Below are positions 4,902 to 33,764 of a stretch of 64,000 nucleotides of DNA, piece after piece (position 1 is the stretch's first letter; every line of letters begins with the position of its first letter). The stretch spans positions 124,001 to 188,000 of IMG/VR virus record IMGVR_UViG_3300040801_001224. One strand, written 5' to 3'. The notes under the pieces were generated by a model. That model was not told the DNA's origin and ran no database searches. It worked only from the letters and a program-made list of their open reading frames with translations. The translations under genes and the position numbers were made by a program.

Positions 4902-5176
4902 GCAATGATTTAGACGATCTTTCTAAGGCTATTGCTCGTGGAATCTCCGGTGGCGTTATGGGTGTACTGTTTGTCTTTGGTATAGCTTTTCTCATCATTG
5001 GCGTTATTTCCAGTATGTTTACGTCTTATGATTCCACTGACGATGAACGCAACGGTGTTCGGTCTGGCTTAGTACTACACATAGATCACGGTACTGGCTG
5101 TCAATATTTGAGTAAACCAGGCGCAGGTTTGACCCCACGATTAGATGATCGTGGCGAACAGATCTGTGATAAATAA
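4898..5176 (+). CDS. Small membrane-anchored protein
   Basis: One TM helix; DHGTGCQYL...GLTPRLD motif. Confidence 0.7.
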   Translation: MSNDLDDLSKAIARGISGGVMGVLFVFGIAFLIIGVISSMFTSYDSTDDERNGVRSGLVLHIDHGTGCQYLSKPGAGLTPRLDDRGEQICDK

Positions 5177-5182
5177 TTTGCT

Positions 5183-5302
5183 ATGGATATATTTGGAATA
5201 ATATTAATGTCAATAATTTTGTCTGTTCTTGTTGTAGGGCTGTGGTGGTCTTTATACGAGATGGGTAAACTGGAAAAGGACGATAATTCTTCAGAAGAGT
5301 AG
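5183..5302 (+). CDS. 39-aa membrane peptide (absent from the ORF track)
   Basis: MDIFGIILMSIILSVLVVGLWWSLYEMGK..., 7 nt after GATAAATA at 5168. Confidence 0.55.
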   Translation: MDIFGIILMSIILSVLVVGLWWSLYEMGKLEKDDNSSEE

Positions 5303-5328
5303 ATAAATACTACAAACGGAGAATTATT

Positions 5329-6081
5329 ATGTCAGCAACACCAGAGCCAAGAACAGAGATTATTAATCAGGTCAAACTGCTATTAGCAGATCAGATGATT
5401 GATCTAGAAGCAGATCCTGAACACTACAATCTTGCTATTGACATGGCTATTGAAAAGCTACGTCAAGCATCTGACGGAGCAAACGAAGAAGCAAATCTAT
5501 TCTTCACTCTTCAGCCAGAACAGACAGAGTACACATTGCCGGACGAAGTACAAAACATCAGACGTCTATACAGACGCGGTGTAGGTGCTAATACTACTGG
5601 CGGCACAAACTTTGATCCATTCGAAGCGGCATTTAGTAACATATATTTGCTACAGGCTGGACGTACCGGTGGCCTTGCTACGTGGGATTTATTTGCCCAG
5701 TTCCAGGAGTCAATTGGTCGTGTGTTTGGATCTGAAATTAATTTTACGTGGAACCCTTCAACTAAAAAGCTAAAGATTATACGTCGAATTCAACATGAAG
5801 AAGATATTAGTATTTTAGCATACATACAAAAGCCAGAACATGTAATGATACGTGACCCTTACATGCGTCCCTGGATACGTGATTACGCTAAAGCACAAGT
5901 TAAAATGATGGTTGGTGAAGCACGTAGCAAGTTCACAGGCGGTTTACCAGGACCAAACGGCAACGTAATCCTTAATGGTGCTGACTTAAAGAACGAAGCC
6001 ATCCAAGAAATTGAAGTATTAGAACAACAACTAAGAGATATTGTAACTGGTGATGCAGGTTACGCATTCTTAATAGGATAA
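5329..6081 (+). CDS. Neck/head-tail connector protein (T4 gp13-like)
   Basis: WIRDYAKA..K..GEARSKF..LPGPNG.V.LNG..LK.EA..E pattern; late promoter at 5302. Confidence 0.8.
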   Translation: MSATPEPRTEIINQVKLLLADQMIDLEADPEHYNLAIDMAIEKLRQASDGANEEANLFFTLQPEQTEYTLPDEVQNIRRLYRRGVGANTTGGTNFDPFEAAFSNIYLLQAGRTGGLATWDLFAQFQESIGRVFGSEINFTWNPSTKKLKIIRRIQHEEDISILAYIQKPEHVMIRDPYMRPWIRDYAKAQVKMMVGEARSKFTGGLPGPNGNVILNGADLKNEAIQEIEVLEQQLRDIVTGDAGYAFLIG

Positions 6082-6087
6082 AATGTT

Positions 6088-6555
6088 ATGACGCCTTTCG
6101 AAATAGTAATGGTAATATTAGGCGTAATTGGTGCTATAGCAACAATTGTTAACCTTTATATTGCGTGGCAAAGACGCCAGAAAGACTGGATTAAAAAGAA
6201 TTATATCTCTGTTGAAGATTTCAATAAATTCACAGATAGCTATGTTAGTAAAGAGGAATATGAAGATAATCGTCGTGTAGACCAACGCGATATTAAACGT
6301 AACGCATATGACATTGCTAAATTAGAACAGGGTGAATATATAGCAAGCCAAGTAATCGACTACCAAGATGTTGATTTAACTGAAAAAAGCCAACAAGAAG
6401 ATGTTGCTATACTGAACCGCAATATGCGAGTAGCAGAACATGAATTCGTAATTGCTCAAAGTAAATTGAAGGATCACGAAACAGAAAAAGCACAGAAACA
6501 GTATGCTAAGAACATAGCAACTGAATTCAAGAAAGTTTGGCCTGACGCCGAATAA
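6088..6555 (+). CDS. N-terminal TM plus coiled-coil protein
   Basis: Hydrophobic first 27 aa, then helical charged region. Confidence 0.65.
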   Translation: MTPFEIVMVILGVIGAIATIVNLYIAWQRRQKDWIKKNYISVEDFNKFTDSYVSKEEYEDNRRVDQRDIKRNAYDIAKLEQGEYIASQVIDYQDVDLTEKSQQEDVAILNRNMRVAEHEFVIAQSKLKDHETEKAQKQYAKNIATEFKKVWPDAE

Positions 6556-6584
6556 AATAACACAGCAAAAGGACACAGTAACCG

Positions 6585-6905
6585 ATGATAACATTAACGG
6601 AAACTGCGATTGAAAAAGCTAAAGAACATTTGGAAGGCCGTGGTAACGGAGTGGGTATACGTTTCGGTGTCACTACCACTGGCTGTTCAGGTTTGGCGTA
6701 TATTATTGAGTTTTGTGATTCTGTACTTGATACTGATGTAGTACAAGAACAGGACGGCTTAAAACTTGTGATAGACAAGAAACACCTTGCGTACATTGAG
6801 GGTTCTAACGTCGACTACGTAAAAGAAGGCTTAAACGAAGGCTTCGAATTCTCTAACCCAAACATGAAAGCCGAGTGTGGCTGTGGAGAATCATTCACGG
6901 TATGA
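6585..6905 (+). CDS. iscA: A-type Fe-S cluster carrier IscA
   Basis: GCSGLAY and CGCGESF motifs. Confidence 0.95.
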   Translation: MITLTETAIEKAKEHLEGRGNGVGIRFGVTTTGCSGLAYIIEFCDSVLDTDVVQEQDGLKLVIDKKHLAYIEGSNVDYVKEGLNEGFEFSNPNMKAECGCGESFTV

Positions 6906-11891: not shown

Positions 11892-12500
11892 ATGGCAGAA
11901 ACATTAAGTAAATTCGGCGTACCATTAGACGGTAGTCGTTTAGGTATATTACACCCAAAGCAATCGTACCGTTTCCGTGTTCTTTTCAAGAACTTCGGTG
12001 TTCAGGGTGCTGACTTAAAAGAACTAACAGCGGGTGTTAAGACTGTTACTCGTCCACAAATTTCAAGCACTAATGATGTTATGTTACATTCTTACAACTC
12101 AATTGGTAAGATTGCTGGCAAGCATGAGTGGGGTGACATGACATTAACTGTTCGTGACGACTTAACTTCAGCAGTAGCAAAGCACGTTGGCGCACAGATG
12201 CAGAAGCAATTCAACTTTTTCGAGCAGACTTCAGCAGTAGCAGGTATTAACTACAAGTTCAGCATGGAAGTCCAGATGTTAGATGGTACAGATAACGAAG
12301 CTCTAGAAGCGTGGGTATGTGAAGGTTGCTACCTAAAAGGCGTTGAGTACGGTGAACACGATTACGAAAGCTCAGAGTCAATGATGATTTCAATGACTAT
12401 TTCAATCGACAACGCTACCCATATCGCTGGTCCAGCCGGAACAGTAGATCCAATGGTACCTGAAGGCGTTGCAGGAATCGACGGACGTACTTTCGGTTAA
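11892..12500 (+). CDS. Tail tube protein (gp19-like)
   Basis: Follows the sheath; YRFRV, KIAGKHEWGDMTLTVRDD, W.CEGCY; late promoter at 11850. Confidence 0.9.
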   Translation: MAETLSKFGVPLDGSRLGILHPKQSYRFRVLFKNFGVQGADLKELTAGVKTVTRPQISSTNDVMLHSYNSIGKIAGKHEWGDMTLTVRDDLTSAVAKHVGAQMQKQFNFFEQTSAVAGINYKFSMEVQMLDGTDNEALEAWVCEGCYLKGVEYGEHDYESSESMMISMTISIDNATHIAGPAGTVDPMVPEGVAGIDGRTFG

Positions 12501-12518
12501 TAACGGAGCCATAGCATA

Positions 12519-13832
12519 ATGGCCGTTACCAGAATAACTAACGATGAAAACATTTTTGTGCGTGGCCCAGCCCACGCACAGAATGTCTTTGGCCTCAACA
12601 ATCAGTTCTTATTAAAAGCTCCTAAACTACAGTTTGAAAATTTCATACGCTTTAATTTTACTGAAAACGCAATTGTACAAAACCACGTTAAAAATTATTT
12701 CCCAGACACCAAGGATATGTTGTCTAGAGTAGGCGCCTATGTTAAAACTGCTACATATCCGGGTATGGAAATTGATTCAGAAGTATTTAACCAATATAAC
12801 AAAAAACGTGTAGTGCAAAAAAGCATCAAGTTTGATCCTATCACTGTTACGATGCACGACATTGCTGATGGTTTGACATTAAGATTCTGGGAATTGTACT
12901 ACACGTGGTTCTTTAAAGATGGAAACAAAGACGTGTTTGTGGGAAACACTGGCCAAGCCCGCTTGGCTGAAAACAAGAATATTACGCCTAGTGATTTTAT
13001 AAGTTCAGAACCCGCCGCCCCAGAAAATGGATACGGAATTATCAGTCAGAACATGGAATCACATAATGAATATGGTTTTAACGTACATTATGCCCAGCAA
13101 CAATTACTTGAAAGTATTGAAATATTTTATTCTCGTGGCAAAGTATACAGTAAGGTTATTTTAGTTAACCCAAAAATCACAGCGTTTAAGCATGACACAT
13201 TAAACTATGAAGGCGTATCTAACGCCATGGAATTAACATTCACCATTGAGTATGAAAATGTCATATATGGCAACAATAACTTTGAATTGACAGTCGGGAA
13301 CAATCCACGTAATGAAAACGACATAAGACTGAGACCAAAACCAACTATGCCCACACAGTCACCTGGTATAATTGATCCGATAGTTGATAGACGTAATCTT
13401 TCCTTAGATACGAGCGGAGCAATTCCGACTAATGATGTTGATTCAAACTCGTTACAAGGCGGCATTACTGATCTAGCTTCAAGTATATTTGGTAATGAAT
13501 TTGGCGGAGCCATTGCAGGCACAATAAACAATCAAATTACCAATGTAGAAAGCCAGCTAGGCAACATTGTTGGTAATATAGGAAACGATGTAGCTAATTC
13601 AGTTATACGTGGGATACAAACAGGCGACTTCAGCTTACAACCCAACCCAATTGAATCAGCAAGAAGTGTAGTTAGGAATGCTGGTAGAAACATACTTGCT
13701 GGCGCAGAACAACAGGCAACTGACTTTGTCATTGGTGCTGTATCAGATGGCGTCAACGCAGGCGTTAATGCTATTATTGACAGTTTTAACAACTCAGGAC
13801 AATCAGGTTCAAGTGATCCAGGAGATCCATAA
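12519..13832 (+). CDS. Tube-fold baseplate/tail-tube initiator protein (gp48/gp54-like)
   Basis: NQYNKKRVVQKSIKFDPITVTMHD...LTFTIEYE tube-like pattern. Confidence 0.65.
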   Translation: MAVTRITNDENIFVRGPAHAQNVFGLNNQFLLKAPKLQFENFIRFNFTENAIVQNHVKNYFPDTKDMLSRVGAYVKTATYPGMEIDSEVFNQYNKKRVVQKSIKFDPITVTMHDIADGLTLRFWELYYTWFFKDGNKDVFVGNTGQARLAENKNITPSDFISSEPAAPENGYGIISQNMESHNEYGFNVHYAQQQLLESIEIFYSRGKVYSKVILVNPKITAFKHDTLNYEGVSNAMELTFTIEYENVIYGNNNFELTVGNNPRNENDIRLRPKPTMPTQSPGIIDPIVDRRNLSLDTSGAIPTNDVDSNSLQGGITDLASSIFGNEFGGAIAGTINNQITNVESQLGNIVGNIGNDVANSVIRGIQTGDFSLQPNPIESARSVVRNAGRNILAGAEQQATDFVIGAVSDGVNAGVNAIIDSFNNSGQSGSSDPGDP

Positions 13833-28257: not shown

Positions 28258-29709
28258 ATGGTTAAAAAATGTACACTTGAAATTAGGGATGAAGTGAATA
28301 TTAAGTTTTCAGGACTTGATGTAATCACACGTCGAAAACTGGCAGACGAAGTTAAGTTTTTTTTACCTTATGCTCGACACGTACCCGCGTACAAATTAGG
28401 TAGATGGGATGGCATGATGAGGTTCTGTGACATAGGTGGCAGGAGTTACTTTCACATCTTGGATAGACTATTGCCAATTGTAGTCGGTGCCGGCTATGAA
28501 CTTGATATACAAGATGATCGCATTCCACACGAGTTTGAATTTGATCACATAAATGAACAAAGCTATTCGCATATAACCTGGCCAGAAGGACATCCAGTTG
28601 AAGGTCAACCCATTGTTTTGCGTGACTATCAAGTGGACGTAATCAACAAGTATCTAGAAAACCCACAGAGTTTACAGGAAATATCTACAGGCGCAGGCAA
28701 GACGTTAATCACTGCGGTATTGTCACATCAAGTAGAAAAGTACGGCCGATCAATTGTAATTGTTCCAAGTAAGGATCTAGTGACTCAGACAGAAGAAGAT
28801 TATATTAACATGGGGTTAGATGTTGGTGTATTTTTTGGTGATAGAAAAGAATATGGCAAGACGCATACGATATGTACGTGGCAGTCGTTAGAGTCATTGG
28901 ATAAGAAAAGCAAAAAGTATGATAGTGAAGTCAGTGTAGAAAGTTTTATTGAAGATGTTGTGTGCGTAATGGTTGACGAAGCACATTCATCTAAGGCAGA
29001 CGTATTAAAGAAATTACTTACAACACATTTTAGGAATTGTCCAATTCGTTGGGGGATGACGGGCACTATTCCAAAGGAAGAACACTTTGCTATGGGTTTA
29101 CAGGTATGTTTAGGTCCAGTTGTAAATCGGGTTAAAGCAAAGGACTTGCAGGAAAAAGGTGTCCTGTCTAACCTTCATGTTCACGTACAGCAATTAGTAG
29201 ATCCGCCATTAGGTTTCAAAGATTATGCGTCAGAGCTTAAATGGCTAACAAGTGACCGCAACAGAGTACAAAAGATAGCAGAGATGATTGAAGAAGTAGA
29301 AGGCAATAGTCTTATACTTGTGACACGCATTGATACTGGAAACTTATTACAAGAGATGATTCCAGACTCAGTGTTCATTAAGGGTGATGTGAAATCAAAA
29401 GATAGAAAAGCTGAGTACAAGGACGTTAATACCGCAGATAATAAGGTAGTTATAGCGACATTTGGTGTTGCCGCAGTTGGCATTAATATTCCACGCATAT
29501 TTAATTTGTTCATGATTGAACCAGGCAAAAGCTTTGTGAGGGTGATACAGAGTATTGGACGTGGCATTAGAACGGCCAAGGATAAGGATTACGTTGATAT
29601 TTACGACATAACATCGACATGTAAATACTCAAAGCGACATTTAACGGAAAGAAAACGCTATTACAAAGAGGCCGAATATCCTTTTAAGGTTACAAAGATA
29701 AAGTACTAA
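28258..29709 (+). CDS. uvsW: SF2 DNA helicase UvsW
   Basis: LRDYQ, STGAGKT, VDEAH, GMTGT, QSIGRGIR. Confidence 0.95.
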   Translation: MVKKCTLEIRDEVNIKFSGLDVITRRKLADEVKFFLPYARHVPAYKLGRWDGMMRFCDIGGRSYFHILDRLLPIVVGAGYELDIQDDRIPHEFEFDHINEQSYSHITWPEGHPVEGQPIVLRDYQVDVINKYLENPQSLQEISTGAGKTLITAVLSHQVEKYGRSIVIVPSKDLVTQTEEDYINMGLDVGVFFGDRKEYGKTHTICTWQSLESLDKKSKKYDSEVSVESFIEDVVCVMVDEAHSSKADVLKKLLTTHFRNCPIRWGMTGTIPKEEHFAMGLQVCLGPVVNRVKAKDLQEKGVLSNLHVHVQQLVDPPLGFKDYASELKWLTSDRNRVQKIAEMIEEVEGNSLILVTRIDTGNLLQEMIPDSVFIKGDVKSKDRKAEYKDVNTADNKVVIATFGVAAVGINIPRIFNLFMIEPGKSFVRVIQSIGRGIRTAKDKDYVDIYDITSTCKYSKRHLTERKRYYKEAEYPFKVTKIKY

Positions 29710-30293
29710 TGAAAACATTTAAGGTAGATTCTAGGTTTTGGAGAAAGCTAAACACACAGACGAATGTTGGCTCTTTCCTCGATCACATGTATGGTCTAAA
29801 GAAAATAAATGACGATGGCGAGCAGACTACTCTACTAATGGAGTGGGATAAAATACCAATGAAAAATAATTCATATGGTACTGCGATTAACGCAATCGCT
29901 AAGGTGTGCGATCCAATTGTGATGCTTGAGTTGTTGGATGCTTCATATAGAAAAGAATCTACTATATATGCGTTCAAGAGATTTACACAGGACGATTCAG
30001 ATAATCTGATTATCTACCCATGTGCGACGCCTAAAATTATGAATATAATGCCAGAATATTGTGAGAAACATTACCCTGGTAAATATGACTTTGAGTTTAC
30101 TTCTGAAAATGGACTCAGATCATATAACGCAATTATATACCTTGACGCAGTGTCGTCTATCATGGAGGATTTATCGTTTCTATTATTACAAGACGCAGAC
30201 GCACACGCACTATACGAATATAAAATAAAAAACGATATTAAATTAGAAGAATACGTTGATTATACAGAATTAAAAGAGAAGGAACTCATATGA
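29709..30293 (+). CDS. Hypothetical protein
   Basis: Coupled 194-aa ORF. Confidence 0.7.
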   Translation: MKTFKVDSRFWRKLNTQTNVGSFLDHMYGLKKINDDGEQTTLLMEWDKIPMKNNSYGTAINAIAKVCDPIVMLELLDASYRKESTIYAFKRFTQDDSDNLIIYPCATPKIMNIMPEYCEKHYPGKYDFEFTSENGLRSYNAIIYLDAVSSIMEDLSFLLLQDADAHALYEYKIKNDIKLEEYVDYTELKEKELI

Positions 30294-30825: not shown

Positions 30826-31296
30826 ATGGCAAAGGCTAAGAAAGCAAAGATTCCATTAAACGAAATACTCGGTGCGATGGACAGAAATAACTGGGAGTAT
30901 TATAGGAACCTCCCAGAAGAATTACAGGAGGAGTTTTCACCTTTTGTAATGATGCGGTATGCCAGTAATGTTAGGAGTAAAGAGTTTTACGGACATTATA
31001 TTACAATGGTTAACGACTTATGTAATGTGAATTTCGATGTACTCAGTAAGCACCCAGAGCTTTTTTGGCAGTTGCTATCACTATCTGGTGTGGGCAAATC
31101 ACAGTTCCATGCTTGGTTGCCACCTGGCAAGAAGGCAAAGAAGAGTAAAGTTCAAGAGTTTTTGTATAAGATGCACCCAACGTATAAGTTAGAAGATTTA
31201 GAAATGCTGGAAAGTATAAACACCAAAGAACAAATACAAGACATGATGCGTGAATATGGTTATGACGACAAAGAGATTAAGGAAATATTCAAATGA
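30826..31296 (+). CDS. Probable clamp-loader small subunit (gp62-like)
   Basis: FSPFVMMRYAS...N...KHPELFWQLL...FHAWL; replication cluster. Confidence 0.55.
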   Translation: MAKAKKAKIPLNEILGAMDRNNWEYYRNLPEELQEEFSPFVMMRYASNVRSKEFYGHYITMVNDLCNVNFDVLSKHPELFWQLLSLSGVGKSQFHAWLPPGKKAKKSKVQEFLYKMHPTYKLEDLEMLESINTKEQIQDMMREYGYDDKEIKEIFK

Positions 31297-31805
31297 AAAT
31301 AAATCACGAATTTGTATTCCAGGTTATGCGTTATATGGCGGAAGAAGAATTATATGAAGACATCCAATGGACTGCAGATTTGAAATTCTACATTAACTGC
31401 GGTGATGTGTTCTTCTGGGGCTGTGCTGATGCCGAAGATTTAACTGAAGATAACTTCCAATTGTTTGTAGACACATATAATGATTGTATAGAAGCGTTAA
31501 AGGATAGCAAAGATGGCGAATACGCATACCTAAACTGGGCACCGACATTATTTTGTGCTAGGTCTCGAAATATGAGGCCGCAAGGTGCGTTGTATAAAAA
31601 CATGCCCGAAGAACTGATCCCATTATTTAATGAATGTGGTGAAGAACGTGAAGTAAATTTTGGAAATCCTTACACAACACCCAAAACTATCGGAGATAAG
31701 CCAGTGTACGCATACCAATCGGAGTATGTGAACCAAAAAATATCATTAGCTGATAAATTAGAATCAGCTTTTAACAAATTCAAAGGATTATTTAAGAGTG
31801 TATAA
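31293..31805 (+). CDS. Hypothetical protein
   Basis: INCGDVFFWGCADAE; LFCARSRNMRPQGALY. Confidence 0.75.
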   Translation: MKINHEFVFQVMRYMAEEELYEDIQWTADLKFYINCGDVFFWGCADAEDLTEDNFQLFVDTYNDCIEALKDSKDGEYAYLNWAPTLFCARSRNMRPQGALYKNMPEELIPLFNECGEEREVNFGNPYTTPKTIGDKPVYAYQSEYVNQKISLADKLESAFNKFKGLFKSV

Positions 31806-32469
31806 GTGTAAATACTGTCATAAAAGTTTTACTCGTGAATCCACGCTTTCTTCACATATGTGCCCGAAGAAAAAACGCATGGCAGAAAAGAACACACTAT
31901 CATCAAGGCTTGGTTTTAGGGTGTTTCAGAGGTTTTATGAACTCACTACAACGCAAAAAAACCCAAAAACGTTTGAAGATTTTGTTGGAAGCCAGTACTA
32001 TAAAGATTTTGTTAAATTTGGACGTTACCTGGGTCAACGTGATGCCATAGACACTGAAAAATTTACAGATTTTGTCATTACCAATGGTGTGAAGTTGCGT
32101 GATTGGACAAAACCGCACGTATATGAAACGTTTTTACAGGATTTAATGAAGAAAGAACCGGCTGAACGAGCATTAGAGCGCACAATCATTACCTTAAATG
32201 AATGGGCTGAAGAAAACAATACGACATTTAACAAATTTTTTGAAGAAGTGACAACAACAGAAGCGACACATATAATACAGGCAGGTAGAATTAGTCCCTG
32301 GGTGCTGTATTTGTCAGAAGAAGCAGGAAAATTGCTTGGAAGAATGAATAGAGAGCAGGGAAATTTAATATCAGCGGTAATTGATCCAAACATATGGAAA
32401 GTACGGTTTGCTAACAGGCCAGATGATGTGGATTTTGTAATTGATGTGTTAGATAAGGCAGGATTATGA
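31798..32469 (+). CDS. Zn-finger-containing conserved replication-cluster protein
   Basis: YKCKYCHKSFTRESTLSSHMC; GRISPWVL. Confidence 0.75.
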   Translation: MYKCKYCHKSFTRESTLSSHMCPKKKRMAEKNTLSSRLGFRVFQRFYELTTTQKNPKTFEDFVGSQYYKDFVKFGRYLGQRDAIDTEKFTDFVITNGVKLRDWTKPHVYETFLQDLMKKEPAERALERTIITLNEWAEENNTTFNKFFEEVTTTEATHIIQAGRISPWVLYLSEEAGKLLGRMNREQGNLISAVIDPNIWKVRFANRPDDVDFVIDVLDKAGL

Positions 32470-33044
32470 GAGTACAAACGGATATTGATATTGACGTGGC
32501 GAACAGGGATGATATTATTTCTAAATTGAAGTGTAGAACTGGCCGTATTGATCGTGAAGGCGACAATTATGACAAACATAACACTGGCGTATACTTTCAG
32601 GACATTCCTTATGATCCATTTACAAACATTTCAACAATAGATCACAAAGTAGCTGAAGAATTAGGCTATTTTAAAGTTGATTTGCTTAATGTACACTTTT
32701 ATAAAGACATACGTAACGAAGAACACTTAAATGAGCTCGTTAATCGTGAGCCACTGTGGCAATTATTGGAACATGAGCAAGTAGTTTCTAAATTATTTCA
32801 GATACACAAGCACTTTGATCTTGTAAACTACCATAAACCCAAATCTGTTGAAGAGATAGCAATGCTTATCGCTATACTACGTCCAGGCAAAGCATATTTA
32901 CAGCGAAAGTCATGGGATGATATTAGAAAGGAAGTTTGGGTCAAGCCTTCAAACAATGAGTACTGGTTTAAAAAAGCCCACGCATTTTCTTACGCAATGG
33001 TCATTGTGGCACAATTAAACTTATTGGCGGAGCAAGCAGAATGA
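32466..33044 (+). CDS. Minimal DNA polymerase III alpha (DnaE)-like catalytic protein
   Basis: TDIDID, KHNTGV, GYFKVDLL, AILRPG, FKKAHAFSY correspond to DnaE PDIDxD, HAxG, GLxKxDFL, ALxRPG, FNKSHAxxY. Confidence 0.85.
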   Translation: MRVQTDIDIDVANRDDIISKLKCRTGRIDREGDNYDKHNTGVYFQDIPYDPFTNISTIDHKVAEELGYFKVDLLNVHFYKDIRNEEHLNELVNREPLWQLLEHEQVVSKLFQIHKHFDLVNYHKPKSVEEIAMLIAILRPGKAYLQRKSWDDIRKEVWVKPSNNEYWFKKAHAFSYAMVIVAQLNLLAEQAE

Positions 33045-33391
33045 ATCATTGGATGTGGGATACATACGGAAAAGTAGAAGAAAGAGTATACGATCATGGG
33101 AATGGCTGGCAGGAAATTGATATGCCATGCGTTTACACGTTTCATTATGACGGAAGAGTGTTATCTCTGAAAAAAGATTGCCTAGGAGACTATTCGTTTG
33201 TACAGCATGAAATAAGTGTTGCCAAACACATGGGTGGCTGGAACCATATATGGAAAATGGGGAGACCGTCATCGTGGCGTATTAGGTTATCGAAGAAAAA
33301 CTTTTTTCTATTGGAACTGACACGCGATTTTAATATGCTTGCTGAAGCTGTCAATGCTAATCCTGATAATTTTGAGAGTGTTACGATTTAA
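33041..33391 (+). CDS. Hypothetical protein
   Basis: Coupled ORF. Confidence 0.6.
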   Translation: MNHWMWDTYGKVEERVYDHGNGWQEIDMPCVYTFHYDGRVLSLKKDCLGDYSFVQHEISVAKHMGGWNHIWKMGRPSSWRIRLSKKNFFLLELTRDFNMLAEAVNANPDNFESVTI

Positions 33392-33764
33392 CTACTAATT
33401 TTATTTGACGTCTTTTGATTCTTTTAGTGACTAGACTGTTGAGTGATGTGATTGGACCGAATATTACTTCTACTTCTTTTGTTTTAAACGTTTGTAGGTA
33501 TTGAGAGAACGGTTTCATTTGCCCCTGCATAAATATATTGATGGGCAACAAGCGATTGGACTCATTCCACCAGTTATCGCCATATTGAAGAAATAACTTT
33601 TTCTCTTCAGGGGTGCGAATAGAGTCAAAGTCATAAAAACTTAAGACCTTATCGTCAGTATTTTGTATAATACCAAGCATTTCGTTCTCTTGCCATACGA
33701 TACACGTTAAGAATGGGTAGGCACTGGCGATTTTGTCTTGGTCATCGCTTATTTTTATTTCCAT
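33381..33764 (-). CDS. Conserved hypothetical protein (leaderless, late)
   Basis: YPFLT..GIIQN..WWNESNRLLPINIF; TATAAATA on - strand 5 nt before ATG. Confidence 0.75.
   Translation of the reverse strand: MEIKISDDQDKIASAYPFLTCIVWQENEMLGIIQNTDDKVLSFYDFDSIRTPEEKKLFLQYGDNWWNESNRLLPINIFMQGQMKPFSQYLQTFKTKEVEVIFGPITSLNSLVTKRIKRRQIKLVVKS

What the first reader, a model, noticed from the sequence alone, without database searches (positions are those of the whole stretch)
32466..33044. 192-aa miniature DnaE-like polymerase with all three catalytic Asp residues
The PDIDxD, HxxG, KxD, RPG and FxKxH motifs of the roughly 1100-aa family C polymerase are compressed, in order, into 192 aa, without PHP, most thumb/fingers, HhH or OB domains. 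It is therefore a streamlined enzyme rather than a simple truncation. It is translationally coupled to a Zn-finger gene inside a T4-type replication cluster. It could be a primer extender, a terminal or protein nucleotidyltransferase, or one subunit of a split enzyme with the 31798 protein.
Basis: partly seen in the sequence, partly recalled or inferred. Interest (0 to 1): 0.62.

Follow-up and report, generated by a model that had tools for sequence, protein, structure and literature searches.

The report
Half of a split mini-DnaE polymerase
The 192-residue protein is the metal-binding half of a two-gene, stripped-down relative of the bacterial replicative polymerase, already described in 2021 from RaK2/PA5oct-like giant phages; its missing nucleotide-binding half lies 43 kb away, so it is not a complete miniature enzyme.

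Summary
The ORF at 32466-33044 (+, 192 aa) is real, and its DnaE-like motifs are real homology. A family profile hits only Pol III alpha in the PDB. The AlphaFold model's 14 best structural matches are all family C polymerases (Z 9.6-4.8; next fold 3.8). D6, D8, D10, H38, K70, D72, R139, P140, K142 and H172 are invariant in 70 distinct homologues.

It is not a self-contained mini-polymerase. It begins exactly at the DxD strand and lacks the GxGRGS triphosphate loop. That loop sits in a separate 170-aa gene at genome 199642-200154, 43 kb downstream and outside the window. This gene passes Pfam PF07733 and ends where the 192-aa protein starts.

The two halves aligned end to end are colinear with E. 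coli alpha 267-776. They are predicted to bind (score 0.89; best control 0.01). One natural fused 375-aa form exists.

The zinc-finger neighbour is a conserved neighbour, not the missing half.

The phage also has a family B polymerase and no PHP or HhH domains. This "minimal, split Pol III alpha" was described by Iyer et al. 2021 (PMC7824862) and is in PHROGs, so it is already known. Its activity is still untested.

The parts
32466..33044 (+). C-terminal unit (192 aa) of the split minimal Pol III alpha-type enzyme. It holds the second half of the Pol beta-like palm and the middle-finger subdomain.
   Evidence: phrog_11778 matches at E 7.8e-70. The profile hits only Pol III alpha in the PDB. 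hhalign aligns it to E. coli alpha 509-642. VIA-align gives Z 9.6-8.3 to DnaE structures, spanning E. coli 403-780. Its partner N-unit lies OUTSIDE the window at genome G000:C1:199642-200154 (+), which is L004:1222-1734.
32481..32495 (+). DxDxD strand (D6, D8, D10). These are the metal-ligand aspartates, equivalent to E. coli D401, D403 and D405.
   Evidence: Invariant in 70 of 70 distinct homologues. The E. coli sequence reads PDFDVDF at 400-406. In the complex model, residues 9-11 pack against N-unit W135, next to the GRGS loop.
32574..32588 (+). K37-H38-N-T-G41 motif, equivalent to E. coli K510-H511-A-G-G514. The thumb domain would be inserted just before it; here it is replaced by a loop of about 8 residues.
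   Evidence: hhalign. H38 is invariant and G41 is present in 69 of 70. The pairwise alignment shows E. coli ~425-508 unmatched.
32673..32681 (+). K70-V-D72, the third catalytic aspartate and its lysine, equivalent to E. coli K553 and D555.
   Evidence: hhalign. Both residues are invariant in 70 of 70.
32880..32891 (+). R139-P140-G141-K142 finger motif, equivalent to E. coli R639-P640-G641-P642.
   Evidence: HMM and hhalign alignments. R139, P140 and K142 are invariant.
32967..32981 (+). F168-K-K-A-H172 finger motif, equivalent to E. coli F756-N-K758-S-H760. The index finger (E. coli ~643-750) is reduced to about 20 residues before it.
   Evidence: HMM alignment to E. coli 752-768. H172 is invariant and F168 is present in 68 of 70. 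Pairwise alignment.
31798..32469 (+). Conserved upstream neighbour: a 223-aa protein with an N-terminal classical C2H2-like finger (C4, C7, H20, C22) and an all-helical body. It is not the missing polymerase half; an accessory role is untested.
   Evidence: phrog_11058 matches at E 5e-70. It is found upstream of the C-unit in 76 of 80 related loci and in 93 phage records. The finger matches eukaryotic C2H2 fingers. The model has pLDDT 92.9 and no fold match (Foldseek E > 0.5; best Z 4.1).

Best explanation
The 192-aa protein is the C-terminal ('Mg2+- and template-binding') subunit of a two-gene, minimal family C (Pol III alpha/DnaE-type) nucleotidyltransferase. This enzyme is typical of RaK2/PA5oct/Atu_ph07-like (group 2.2) large phages.

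Shown:
- It carries the palm strand with the DxD metal ligands (D6, D8), the third aspartate with its lysine (K70, D72), and the middle-finger motifs RPGK and FKKAH.
- The thumb and index finger are deleted. PHP, ring and little fingers, the clamp-binding region, HhH and OB are absent.
- It lacks the first palm strand and the GxGRGS loop that holds the dNTP triphosphate. Those are in a separate 170-aa protein (N-unit) at genome 199642-200154, 43 kb downstream on the same strand. That protein ends (...EFLK) exactly where this one begins.

Inferred:
- The two proteins assemble side by side, with the GRGS strand next to the DIDID strand, to rebuild one Pol beta-like active site of about 362 residues.
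- The heterodimer is a DNA-templated polymerase that works beside the phage's own family B replicase. The role could be repair, gap filling or primer extension, and it is probably short-patch, because no clamp-binding or duplex-gripping domains remain.

Alone, the 192-aa protein should be inactive.
For: Homology of the C-unit to Pol III alpha:
- phrog_11778 at E 7.8e-70, and phrog_405 (full-length Pol III alpha) positions 579-681.
- The PDB profile hits are all Pol III alpha, with hhalign agreeing.
- The top 14 structural matches are all DnaE or PolC, Z 9.6-4.8, against 3.8 for the next fold. Foldseek's top 8 are Pol III alpha.
- The catalytic and finger residues are invariant in 70 distinct homologues.

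The N-unit:
- The only PF07733 match in the genome, 38.7 bits against a cut-off of 23.9; also phrog_11127 at E 7.6e-51.
- WGVGRGSSVxS is invariant, and all 33 aligned sequences end at ...EF(L/I/F)(K/R), two with one further E.
- It aligns to E. coli 322-393, and all 9 of its PDB hits are Pol III alpha.
- The N and C units placed end to end align colinearly with E. coli alpha 267-776 straight across the junction.

Co-occurrence:
- Genus tallies of the two units in the phage collection are nearly identical.
- The N-unit is present as a separate small ORF in 3 of 3 complete IMG/VR genomes that carry the C-unit.
- In Ralstonia phage RsoM2USA the two genes lie 4.2 kb apart on one strand.

Fused form: a natural 375-aa protein (P0320, L099:1066-2193) has the N-unit at residues 13-181 (hhalign probability 99.7) and the C-unit at 190-372 (E 2.2e-41). 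It is followed by the same convergent small gene as in the window.

Predicted binding: score 0.89 in three runs, best of 3 controls 0.01. That mark was reached by 58 of 80 solved complexes and 2 of 110 mismatched pairs (roughly, since my own alignments were used). The runs share at least 93% of contacts and the partner pLDDT is at least 85. C-unit residues 3-12 touch N-unit residues 131-144.

Family B polymerase is present. PHP and HHH_6 are absent.

Literature: Iyer et al. 2021 describe exactly this split minimal Pol III alpha in group 2.2 jumbo phages (PMC7824862).
Against: - No biochemical or genetic test exists for any member. I found none in the paper library.
- Sequence-level significance against solved DnaE is modest: E about 3e-3, hhalign probability 26% for the C-unit and 81% for the N-unit. 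The C-unit is below the Pfam gathering score (PF17657, 13.9 bits against 22).
- The complex score may partly reflect the model's memory of contacts within intact Pol III alpha. It shows likeness, not binding.
- The fused form rests on a single 2.4-kb metagenomic contig.
- With thumb, index, ring and little fingers gone, it is unclear how primer-template DNA would be held. A polymerase activity, rather than another nucleotidyl transfer, is therefore inferred only.
Confidence: 0.78

Rival explanations
1. Stand-alone miniature polymerase. On this view the 192-aa protein alone is a complete, streamlined nucleotidyltransferase.
For: All three acidic residues and the finger motifs are present and invariant. 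The protein folds confidently on its own (pLDDT 86.5).
Against: It begins at the DxD strand; in some relatives the initiator Met directly precedes DIDID. It therefore has no GS/GRGS triphosphate loop and no first palm strand. Both are present in every Pol beta-fold transferase and are supplied here by a separate, co-occurring gene. A fused form joins exactly these two pieces.
Confidence: 0.04
2. The zinc-finger protein (31798) is a subunit. Either it is the missing half, or it is a third, DNA-binding accessory that stands in for the lost thumb and fingers.
For: It lies directly upstream in this genome with a 4-nt overlap. The same gene order holds in 76 of 80 related loci and in distant phages: RsoM2USA at 21% identity and Atu_ph07. 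A C2H2-like finger suggests nucleic-acid binding.
Against: As the missing half, it is excluded. It shows no Pol III-like sequence or fold, and the true N-terminal half is identified elsewhere. As an accessory, the evidence is weak. The whole block from helicase to DnaB is syntenic, so adjacency may only be inherited order. The gap to the C-unit is 30 nt or less in only 16 of 76 loci and reaches 2.6 kb. In Xoo-sp13 the detectable homologue lies 10 kb away.
Confidence: 0.15
3. The N/C heterodimer is a nucleotidyltransferase that is not a templated DNA polymerase. Possibilities include a terminal transferase, a primer or protein nucleotidylating enzyme, or an oligonucleotide or signal synthase.
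For: All DNA-duplex-gripping and clamp-binding domains are lost. The phage already has a family B replicase. Pol beta-fold enzymes cover many such activities (established knowledge).
Against: The middle-finger motifs RPG and FxKxH are specific to family C polymerases rather than generic Pol beta-fold transferases. They are invariant here. The gene sits in the primase/helicase block.
Confidence: 0.15
4. Inactive remnant or purely structural protein derived from a decayed DnaE gene.
For: The size reduction is extreme, and some database records label it a membrane or hypothetical protein.
Against: Length is strictly conserved at 189-203 aa. Every catalytic residue is invariant across 70 distinct sequences and across hosts from Agrobacterium to Vibrio. 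525 cluster representatives were found.
Confidence: 0.03

Closest known systems
Split minimal DNA polymerase III alpha of group 2.2 jumbo phages, C-terminal unit (Iyer, Anantharaman, Krishnan, Burroughs & Aravind 2021, Viruses 13:63, PMC7824862; phrog_11778; e.g. PA5oct EST35_0220, RaK2 ORF124)
   Same: Same family: 55% identity to PA5oct and 46% to RaK2, with the same length. The synteny block is the same: helicase ... ZnF, C-unit, convergent small gene, structural protein, primase, DnaB. The N-unit is likewise separate and distant, and a family B polymerase is likewise present.
   Different: Nothing essential. This copy comes from an uncultivated 328-kb phage. Additions here: the exact split point, the mapping of the thumb and index-finger deletions, a supported complex prediction, one fused 375-aa natural form, and presence in a 141.6-kb (non-jumbo) phage.
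Bacterial DnaE / Pol III alpha (E. coli alpha, PDB 2HNH; Taq 2HPI; M. tuberculosis DnaE1 5LEW)
   Same: The Pol beta-like palm has the DxD strand, the K-x-D strand, the KH..G motif, and the RPG and F-x-K-x-H finger motifs in the same order. The structural match is Z 8.9-9.6 over E. coli 403-780.
   Different: DnaE is one chain of about 1160 aa with PHP, thumb, four finger subdomains, clamp-binding, HhH and OB parts. Here there are 192 aa, with the GRGS half of the palm on another polypeptide, the thumb (~425-508) and index finger (~643-750) deleted, and nothing after ~780.
PolC of Firmicutes (G. kaustophilus PolC, PDB 3F2C)
   Same: Same family C catalytic core; Z 7.4 over 968-1295.
   Different: The match is weaker than to DnaE. 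PolC has an inserted proofreading exonuclease and a permuted OB domain.
Full-length phage DnaE (group 3.2 phages; phrog_405, about 1190 positions)
   Same: The N-unit maps to profile positions 360-429 and the C-unit to 579-681, colinear.
   Different: Those are host-like enzymes with a PHP domain that serve as the phage's replicase. The minimal form accompanies a family B replicase instead (PMC7824862).
Bacillus subtilis DnaE as RNA-primer extender handing off to PolC (recalled from the literature, not tested here)
   Same: A second, family C polymerase working beside the main replicase. This is a possible functional analogy, given the neighbouring primase and helicase genes.
   Different: This is only an analogy. 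B. subtilis DnaE is full length and binds the clamp.

Membership tests
Family C DNA polymerase catalytic core (Pol III alpha / DnaE) | Pol beta-like palm with the DxD pair and a third aspartate on the neighbouring strand | tested here: met
   D6/D8 (plus D10) and K70/D72 align with E. coli D401/D403 and K553/D555. They are invariant in 70 sequences. The structural match is Z up to 9.6.
Family C DNA polymerase catalytic core (Pol III alpha / DnaE) | GxGRGS triphosphate-binding loop and first palm strand in the same polypeptide | tested here: not met
   These are absent from the 192-aa ORF, which starts at the DxD strand. They are present in a separate 170-aa gene at genome 199642-200154 (G136-S145 matches E. 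coli 359-368). So the feature is met only in trans.
Family C DNA polymerase catalytic core (Pol III alpha / DnaE) | Finger motifs RPG and F-x-K-x-H | tested here: met
   R139-P140-G-K142 matches E. coli 639-642, and F168..H172 matches 756-760. The key residues are invariant.
Family C DNA polymerase catalytic core (Pol III alpha / DnaE) | Curated Pfam score reached (PF07733 NTPase domain / PF17657 finger domain) | tested here: not met
   The C-unit scores 13.9 bits on PF17657 against a cut-off of 22. The N-unit passes PF07733 with 38.7 bits against 23.9.
Family C DNA polymerase catalytic core (Pol III alpha / DnaE) | PHP domain, thumb, and the clamp-binding/HhH/OB C-terminal region | tested here: not met
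   There is no PF02811 or PF14579 match anywhere in the 328-kb genome. The thumb and index finger are unmatched in the alignment. The protein ends at the equivalent of E. coli ~780.
Family C DNA polymerase catalytic core (Pol III alpha / DnaE) | Template-directed DNA synthesis | not testable with these tools
   This needs an enzyme assay. No published assay was found.
Split minimal Pol III alpha of group 2.2 jumbo phages (Iyer et al. 2021), C-terminal unit | Full-length match to the phage-specific family of about 190 aa | tested here: met
   phrog_11778 matches at E 7.8e-70, residues 3-190 against profile 5-194 of 197. 96 phage records were found, all with at least 80% coverage.
Split minimal Pol III alpha of group 2.2 jumbo phages (Iyer et al. 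2021), C-terminal unit | Separate N-terminal NTP-binding unit encoded by a distant gene in the same genome | tested here: met
   The N-unit lies at genome 199642-200154, 43.2 kb away start to start. The same holds in 3 of 3 complete related genomes.
Split minimal Pol III alpha of group 2.2 jumbo phages (Iyer et al. 2021), C-terminal unit | Accompanies a family B polymerase and T4-type replication genes | tested here: met
   PF00136 and PF03104 match at genome 235301-239770. UvsX, UvsW-like helicase, primase and DnaB-like helicase are in the window. Gene order is the same as in PA5oct.
Split minimal Pol III alpha of group 2.2 jumbo phages (Iyer et al. 2021), C-terminal unit | The two units form one enzyme | tested here: inconclusive
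   Support is by prediction only: score 0.89 against a best control of 0.01. One natural fusion protein also supports it. There is no physical evidence.

The most novel reading that the evidence does not exclude
The N/C pair (about 362 aa in all) is a working, minimal family C DNA polymerase. The conserved upstream C2H2-finger protein serves as its DNA-holding subunit in place of the lost thumb and fingers. The trio extends primers made by the neighbouring gp61-type primase before hand-off to the family B replicase. This would be a phage parallel to DnaE-to-PolC hand-off in Bacillus, and a living model of an ancestral modular Pol III.
Probability: 0.1. Interest if true: 0.7.

Novelty: already known. 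Interest (0 to 1): 0.36.

Why it matters
If the two small proteins really rebuild a working active site, this is the smallest known family C polymerase core. It is about 362 residues in two chains, against about 1160 in one. That would give a tractable system for asking what the bare Pol III palm plus middle finger can do. It would also help explain why large T4-like phages keep a second, bacterial-type polymerase module beside a eukaryote-like family B replicase, and whether the minimal form is ancestral or reduced. The existence and the split architecture were published in 2021, so nothing in kind is new here. The open question is biochemical. The natural fused form and cultured relatives (PA5oct, RaK2, Atu_ph07) make it directly testable.

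Tried and rejected
- Megablast of 6 kb around the gene against the phage collection gave no match. Relatives are visible only at protein level.
- Single-sequence phmmer against the PDB gave only chance hits with E > 0.5. A family profile was needed.
- Pfam on the C-unit gave only a sub-threshold finger hit.
- Foldseek against the PDB gave E of 2e-3 at best, just short of its 1e-3 line, though the top 8 hits were all Pol III alpha. VIA-align was clearer.
- Zinc-finger protein as a polymerase part: there was no PDB sequence hit beyond the finger, no Foldseek match, and a best Z of 4.1 in the wide search. T4 gp59 appeared at Z 3.0 with rmsd 13 A, which is meaningless. It is rejected as the missing half. 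Its role as an accessory stays open.
- The gp59 helicase-loader Pfam families were not found in the genome.
- I looked for the N-unit within 10 kb either side of 80 related C-unit loci and found none.
- Supplementary expression tables for PA5oct are not held, and the main text has nothing on these genes.
No experimental follow-up to Iyer et al. 2021 was found.
No expression or read-level evidence was obtained.
- P0333 (233 aa) has a C-unit N-terminal half followed by unrelated sequence. I took it as a probable frameshift or chimera and did not pursue it.
Full report
**1. What is there**

The window is bases 124001-188000 of a 328,096-bp virus record with direct terminal repeats. The ORF 32466..33044 (+) encodes 192 residues. 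Its ATG overlaps the stop of the upstream 223-aa gene by four bases (ATGA). Its stop overlaps the start of the next ORF in the same way.

- T5-D6-I-D8-I-D10-V
- K37-H38-N-T-G41
- K70-V-D72
- R139-P140-G-K142
- F168-K-K-A-H172

The neighbourhood is a T4-type replication and recombination block:
- UvsX-like recombinase (24435)
- UvsW-like helicase (28258)
- gp61-type primase (34728)
- gp41/DnaB-type helicase (35768)

Gene order matches Pseudomonas phage PA5oct gene for gene and Klebsiella phage RaK2.

**2. Is the DnaE likeness real?**

Yes.
- Pfam alone gives only a sub-threshold finger-domain hit, and single-sequence search of the PDB gives nothing.
- PHROGs places the protein in phrog_11778, 'DNA polymerase', at E 7.8e-70 over its full length. 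It also matches the full-length Pol III alpha family phrog_405 at positions 579-681.
- The word search found 1445 clusters, all of about 190-200 aa.
- A profile of 33 of them (A1) hits only Pol III alpha chains in the PDB. It does so in three colinear stretches, E. coli 403-424, 592-641 and 752-768.
- hhalign against E. coli DnaE (fetched) pairs K37/H38 with K510/H511, K70/D72 with K553/D555, and R139-K142 with 639-642.
- The AlphaFold2 model (pLDDT 86.5) has Pol III alpha as its eight best Foldseek hits.
- With VIA-align, the 14 best chains are all DnaE or PolC, at Z 9.6 to 4.8 and spanning E. coli 403-780. The next fold scores Z 3.8.
- I compared 70 distinct homologues: 80 IMG/VR loci plus PA5oct, RaK2, Atu_ph07, RsoM2USA, Xoo-sp13, RAS14 and Slickus01. 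D6, D8, D10, H38, K70, D72, R139, P140, K142 and H172 never change.

One caveat applies. Two automated alignments put D6 opposite E. coli D403 rather than D401. Both proteins carry DxDxD, so I take D6/D8 as equivalent to D401/D403. The register is uncertain by two residues.

**3. What it lacks, and where that is**

The protein starts at the DxD strand. In RsoM2USA, Xoo-sp13 and RAS14 the initiator Met directly precedes DIDID. A Pol beta-fold transferase also needs the preceding strand and the G-S loop that holds the triphosphate.

A scan of the whole genome with Pfam PF07733 found one match, at 199921-200172. It belongs to a 170-aa ORF at genome 199642-200154 (L004:1222-1734). This lies 43.2 kb downstream on the same strand and outside the window.
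- It passes the curated cut-off, 38.7 bits against 23.9, and is phrog_11127, 'DNA polymerase'.
- At least 7976 small homologues exist.
- In 33 aligned ones, WGVGRGSSVxS is invariant, and every sequence ends at ...EF(L/I/F)(K/R); two carry one further E.
- This unit aligns to E. coli 322-393, with G136-S145 opposite G359-S368.
- All nine of its PDB profile hits are Pol III alpha.

E. coli continues from residue 393 with NPERVSMP and then D401. The phage C-unit begins MRVQT and then D6. The N- and C-units joined end to end align colinearly with E. coli alpha 267-776 right across the junction. Two large deletions appear: the thumb (about 425-508) and the index finger (about 643-750).

Elsewhere in the genome there is no PHP and no HHH_6 domain. 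The finger-domain model finds only the C-unit itself.

**4. Do the two halves work together?**

- *Co-occurrence.* Genus tallies of the two units in the phage collection are almost identical. The N-unit is a separate small ORF in 3 of 3 complete IMG/VR genomes that carry the C-unit, 59-61 kb away. It is also present in 1 of 2 incomplete genomes.
- *Linkage.* The genes are usually far apart, with none within 10 kb either side in 80 loci. In RsoM2USA, however, N-unit, zinc-finger gene and C-unit lie within 5.3 kb on one strand. In the 141.6-kb Alishewanella phage Slickus01 the two units are 11 kb apart.
- *Fusion.* The exhaustive profile search found 525 representatives, and the best 150 were nearly all of 84-233 aa. 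One was a 375-aa protein, P0320. Its residues 13-181 are a full N-unit (hhalign probability 99.7, E 2.3e-25), and residues 190-372 are the C-unit. The gene lies inside a 2.4-kb metagenomic contig. It is followed by the same convergent small gene that follows the C-unit in the window. This rests on a single contig.
- *Complex prediction.* The score was 0.89 in each of three runs, and the best of 3 controls scored 0.01. That mark was reached by 58 of 80 solved complexes and 2 of 110 mismatched pairs. These counts hold only roughly, because my own alignments were used. The runs share at least 93% of contacts, and the partner pLDDT is at least 85. C-unit residues 3-12 (the DIDID strand) touch N-unit residues 131-144 (the GRGS strand and loop), and the N-unit C-terminus touches the C-unit. 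This is the geometry of an intact Pol beta-like palm. The model may be recalling intact Pol III alpha, so this shows likeness and not binding.

**5. The zinc-finger neighbour**

The 31798 product has a classical C2H2-like finger (C4, C7, H20, C22) that matches eukaryotic fingers. The rest is a confidently modelled all-helical body (pLDDT 92.9). That body has no fold match, so it is not a Pol III piece.

It is the upstream neighbour of the C-unit in 76 of 80 related loci and occurs in 93 phage records. However, the whole helicase-to-DnaB block is syntenic. The intergenic gap ranges from an overlap to 2.6 kb, and is 30 nt or less in only 16 of 76 loci. A role as a DNA-binding accessory is possible but untested.

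**6. Mechanism proposed**

Shown: the C-unit supplies the metal ligands and the template/dNTP-facing middle finger, and the N-unit supplies the triphosphate loop.

Inferred: they form a heterodimer of about 362 residues with one active site. [quoted passage not shown] Its place next to the primase and helicase genes makes primer extension a reasonable guess.

The genome's family B polymerase lies at 235301-239770. A DnaQ-type exonuclease is encoded 8 kb upstream of the N-unit.

**7. Comparison with what is known**

Iyer et al. [quoted passage not shown] The window's protein is an ortholog of that C-terminal unit.

PHROGs and several GenBank records already label it as a DNA polymerase. I found no experimental study of it.

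The finding is therefore real but already known in kind. This analysis adds:
- the exact split point
- the mapping of the deletions
- a controlled complex prediction
- a fused natural form
- occurrence in a non-jumbo phage

**8. Limits**

All functional statements beyond homology are inference.

Noticed in passing
outside the window: genome G000:C1:235301-239770 (L001:487-2856; L003:114-1073 and 1063-2175): The family B polymerase is in pieces. A 789-aa ORF holds the exonuclease and the first part of the polymerase domain, with an intein-splicing hit at residues 680-784 (33.7 bits, just under the 35.8 cut-off). Next comes a 319-aa ORF with a weak restriction-endonuclease-like hit. A 370-aa ORF then carries the rest of the polymerase domain. 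This looks like a gene fractured by a split intein with a free-standing endonuclease.
   Followed up: partly
outside the window: genome G000:C1:190260-192145 (L093:374-1243 and 1477-2259): A 260-aa DnaQ/RNase T-type 3'-5' exonuclease (75 bits) is preceded by an N6/N4 DNA methylase, 8 kb upstream of the N-unit. In Xanthomonas phage Xoo-sp13 a gene annotated as 'Pol III epsilon' lies 2.3 kb downstream of the C-unit. It could be a proofreader for the minimal polymerase; this is untested.
   Followed up: partly
L099:1066-2193 (protein P0320): A natural 375-aa protein fuses the N-unit and C-unit through a linker of about 9 residues. It sits on a 2.4-kb metagenomic contig with 25% G+C, and the usual convergent small gene lies downstream. 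It is a candidate unsplit form of the minimal polymerase, known from a single contig only.
   Followed up: yes
window 31798-32469 (+): A classical eukaryote-type C2H2-like zinc finger (C-x2-C-x12-H-x-C) heads a 223-aa all-helical phage protein. The confident model (pLDDT 92.9) has no match among solved structures; the best Z is 4.1.
   Followed up: partly
window 33381-33764 (-): A 127-aa gene on the opposite strand (phrog_11637, function unknown) converges on the C-unit. It overlaps the 3' end of ORF 33041-33391 by 11 nt. It keeps this position in 79 of 80 related loci, in RaK2, PA5oct and Atu_ph07, and next to the fused form.
   Followed up: partly
window 29709-30293, 31293-31805 and 33041-33391 (all +): Three ORFs (194, 170 and 116 aa) inside the conserved replication block have no tblastn match in any of 80 related loci and no Pfam or PHROG hit. 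They look like lineage-specific insertions. The 116-aa ORF is the one whose start overlaps the C-unit stop.
   Followed up: partly
L088 (Alishewanella phage Slickus01, 141,644 bp): C-unit 12480-13091, N-unit 1129-1641: Both units occur in a phage well below the 200-kb 'jumbo' limit, 11 kb apart. The split minimal polymerase is therefore not confined to jumbo phages.
   Followed up: partly
L006 (Ralstonia phage RsoM2USA): N-unit 1300-1821, zinc-finger gene 4916-5602, C-unit 6010-6591: Here the N-unit, the zinc-finger gene and the C-unit lie on one strand within 5.3 kb, unlike the 30-180 kb separation in other phages.
   Followed up: partly
L092:3001-3576 (Agrobacterium phage Atu_ph07, FDI40_gp074): The annotated start (3082) cuts off the first 27 residues, including the DxDxD strand. 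The open frame and the tblastn match begin at about 3001. The start in the public record is probably mis-called.
   Followed up: partly
protein P0333 (233 aa): The first 114 residues are the N-terminal half of a C-unit, and the rest is unrelated sequence. It is probably a frameshift or an assembly chimera.
   Followed up: no
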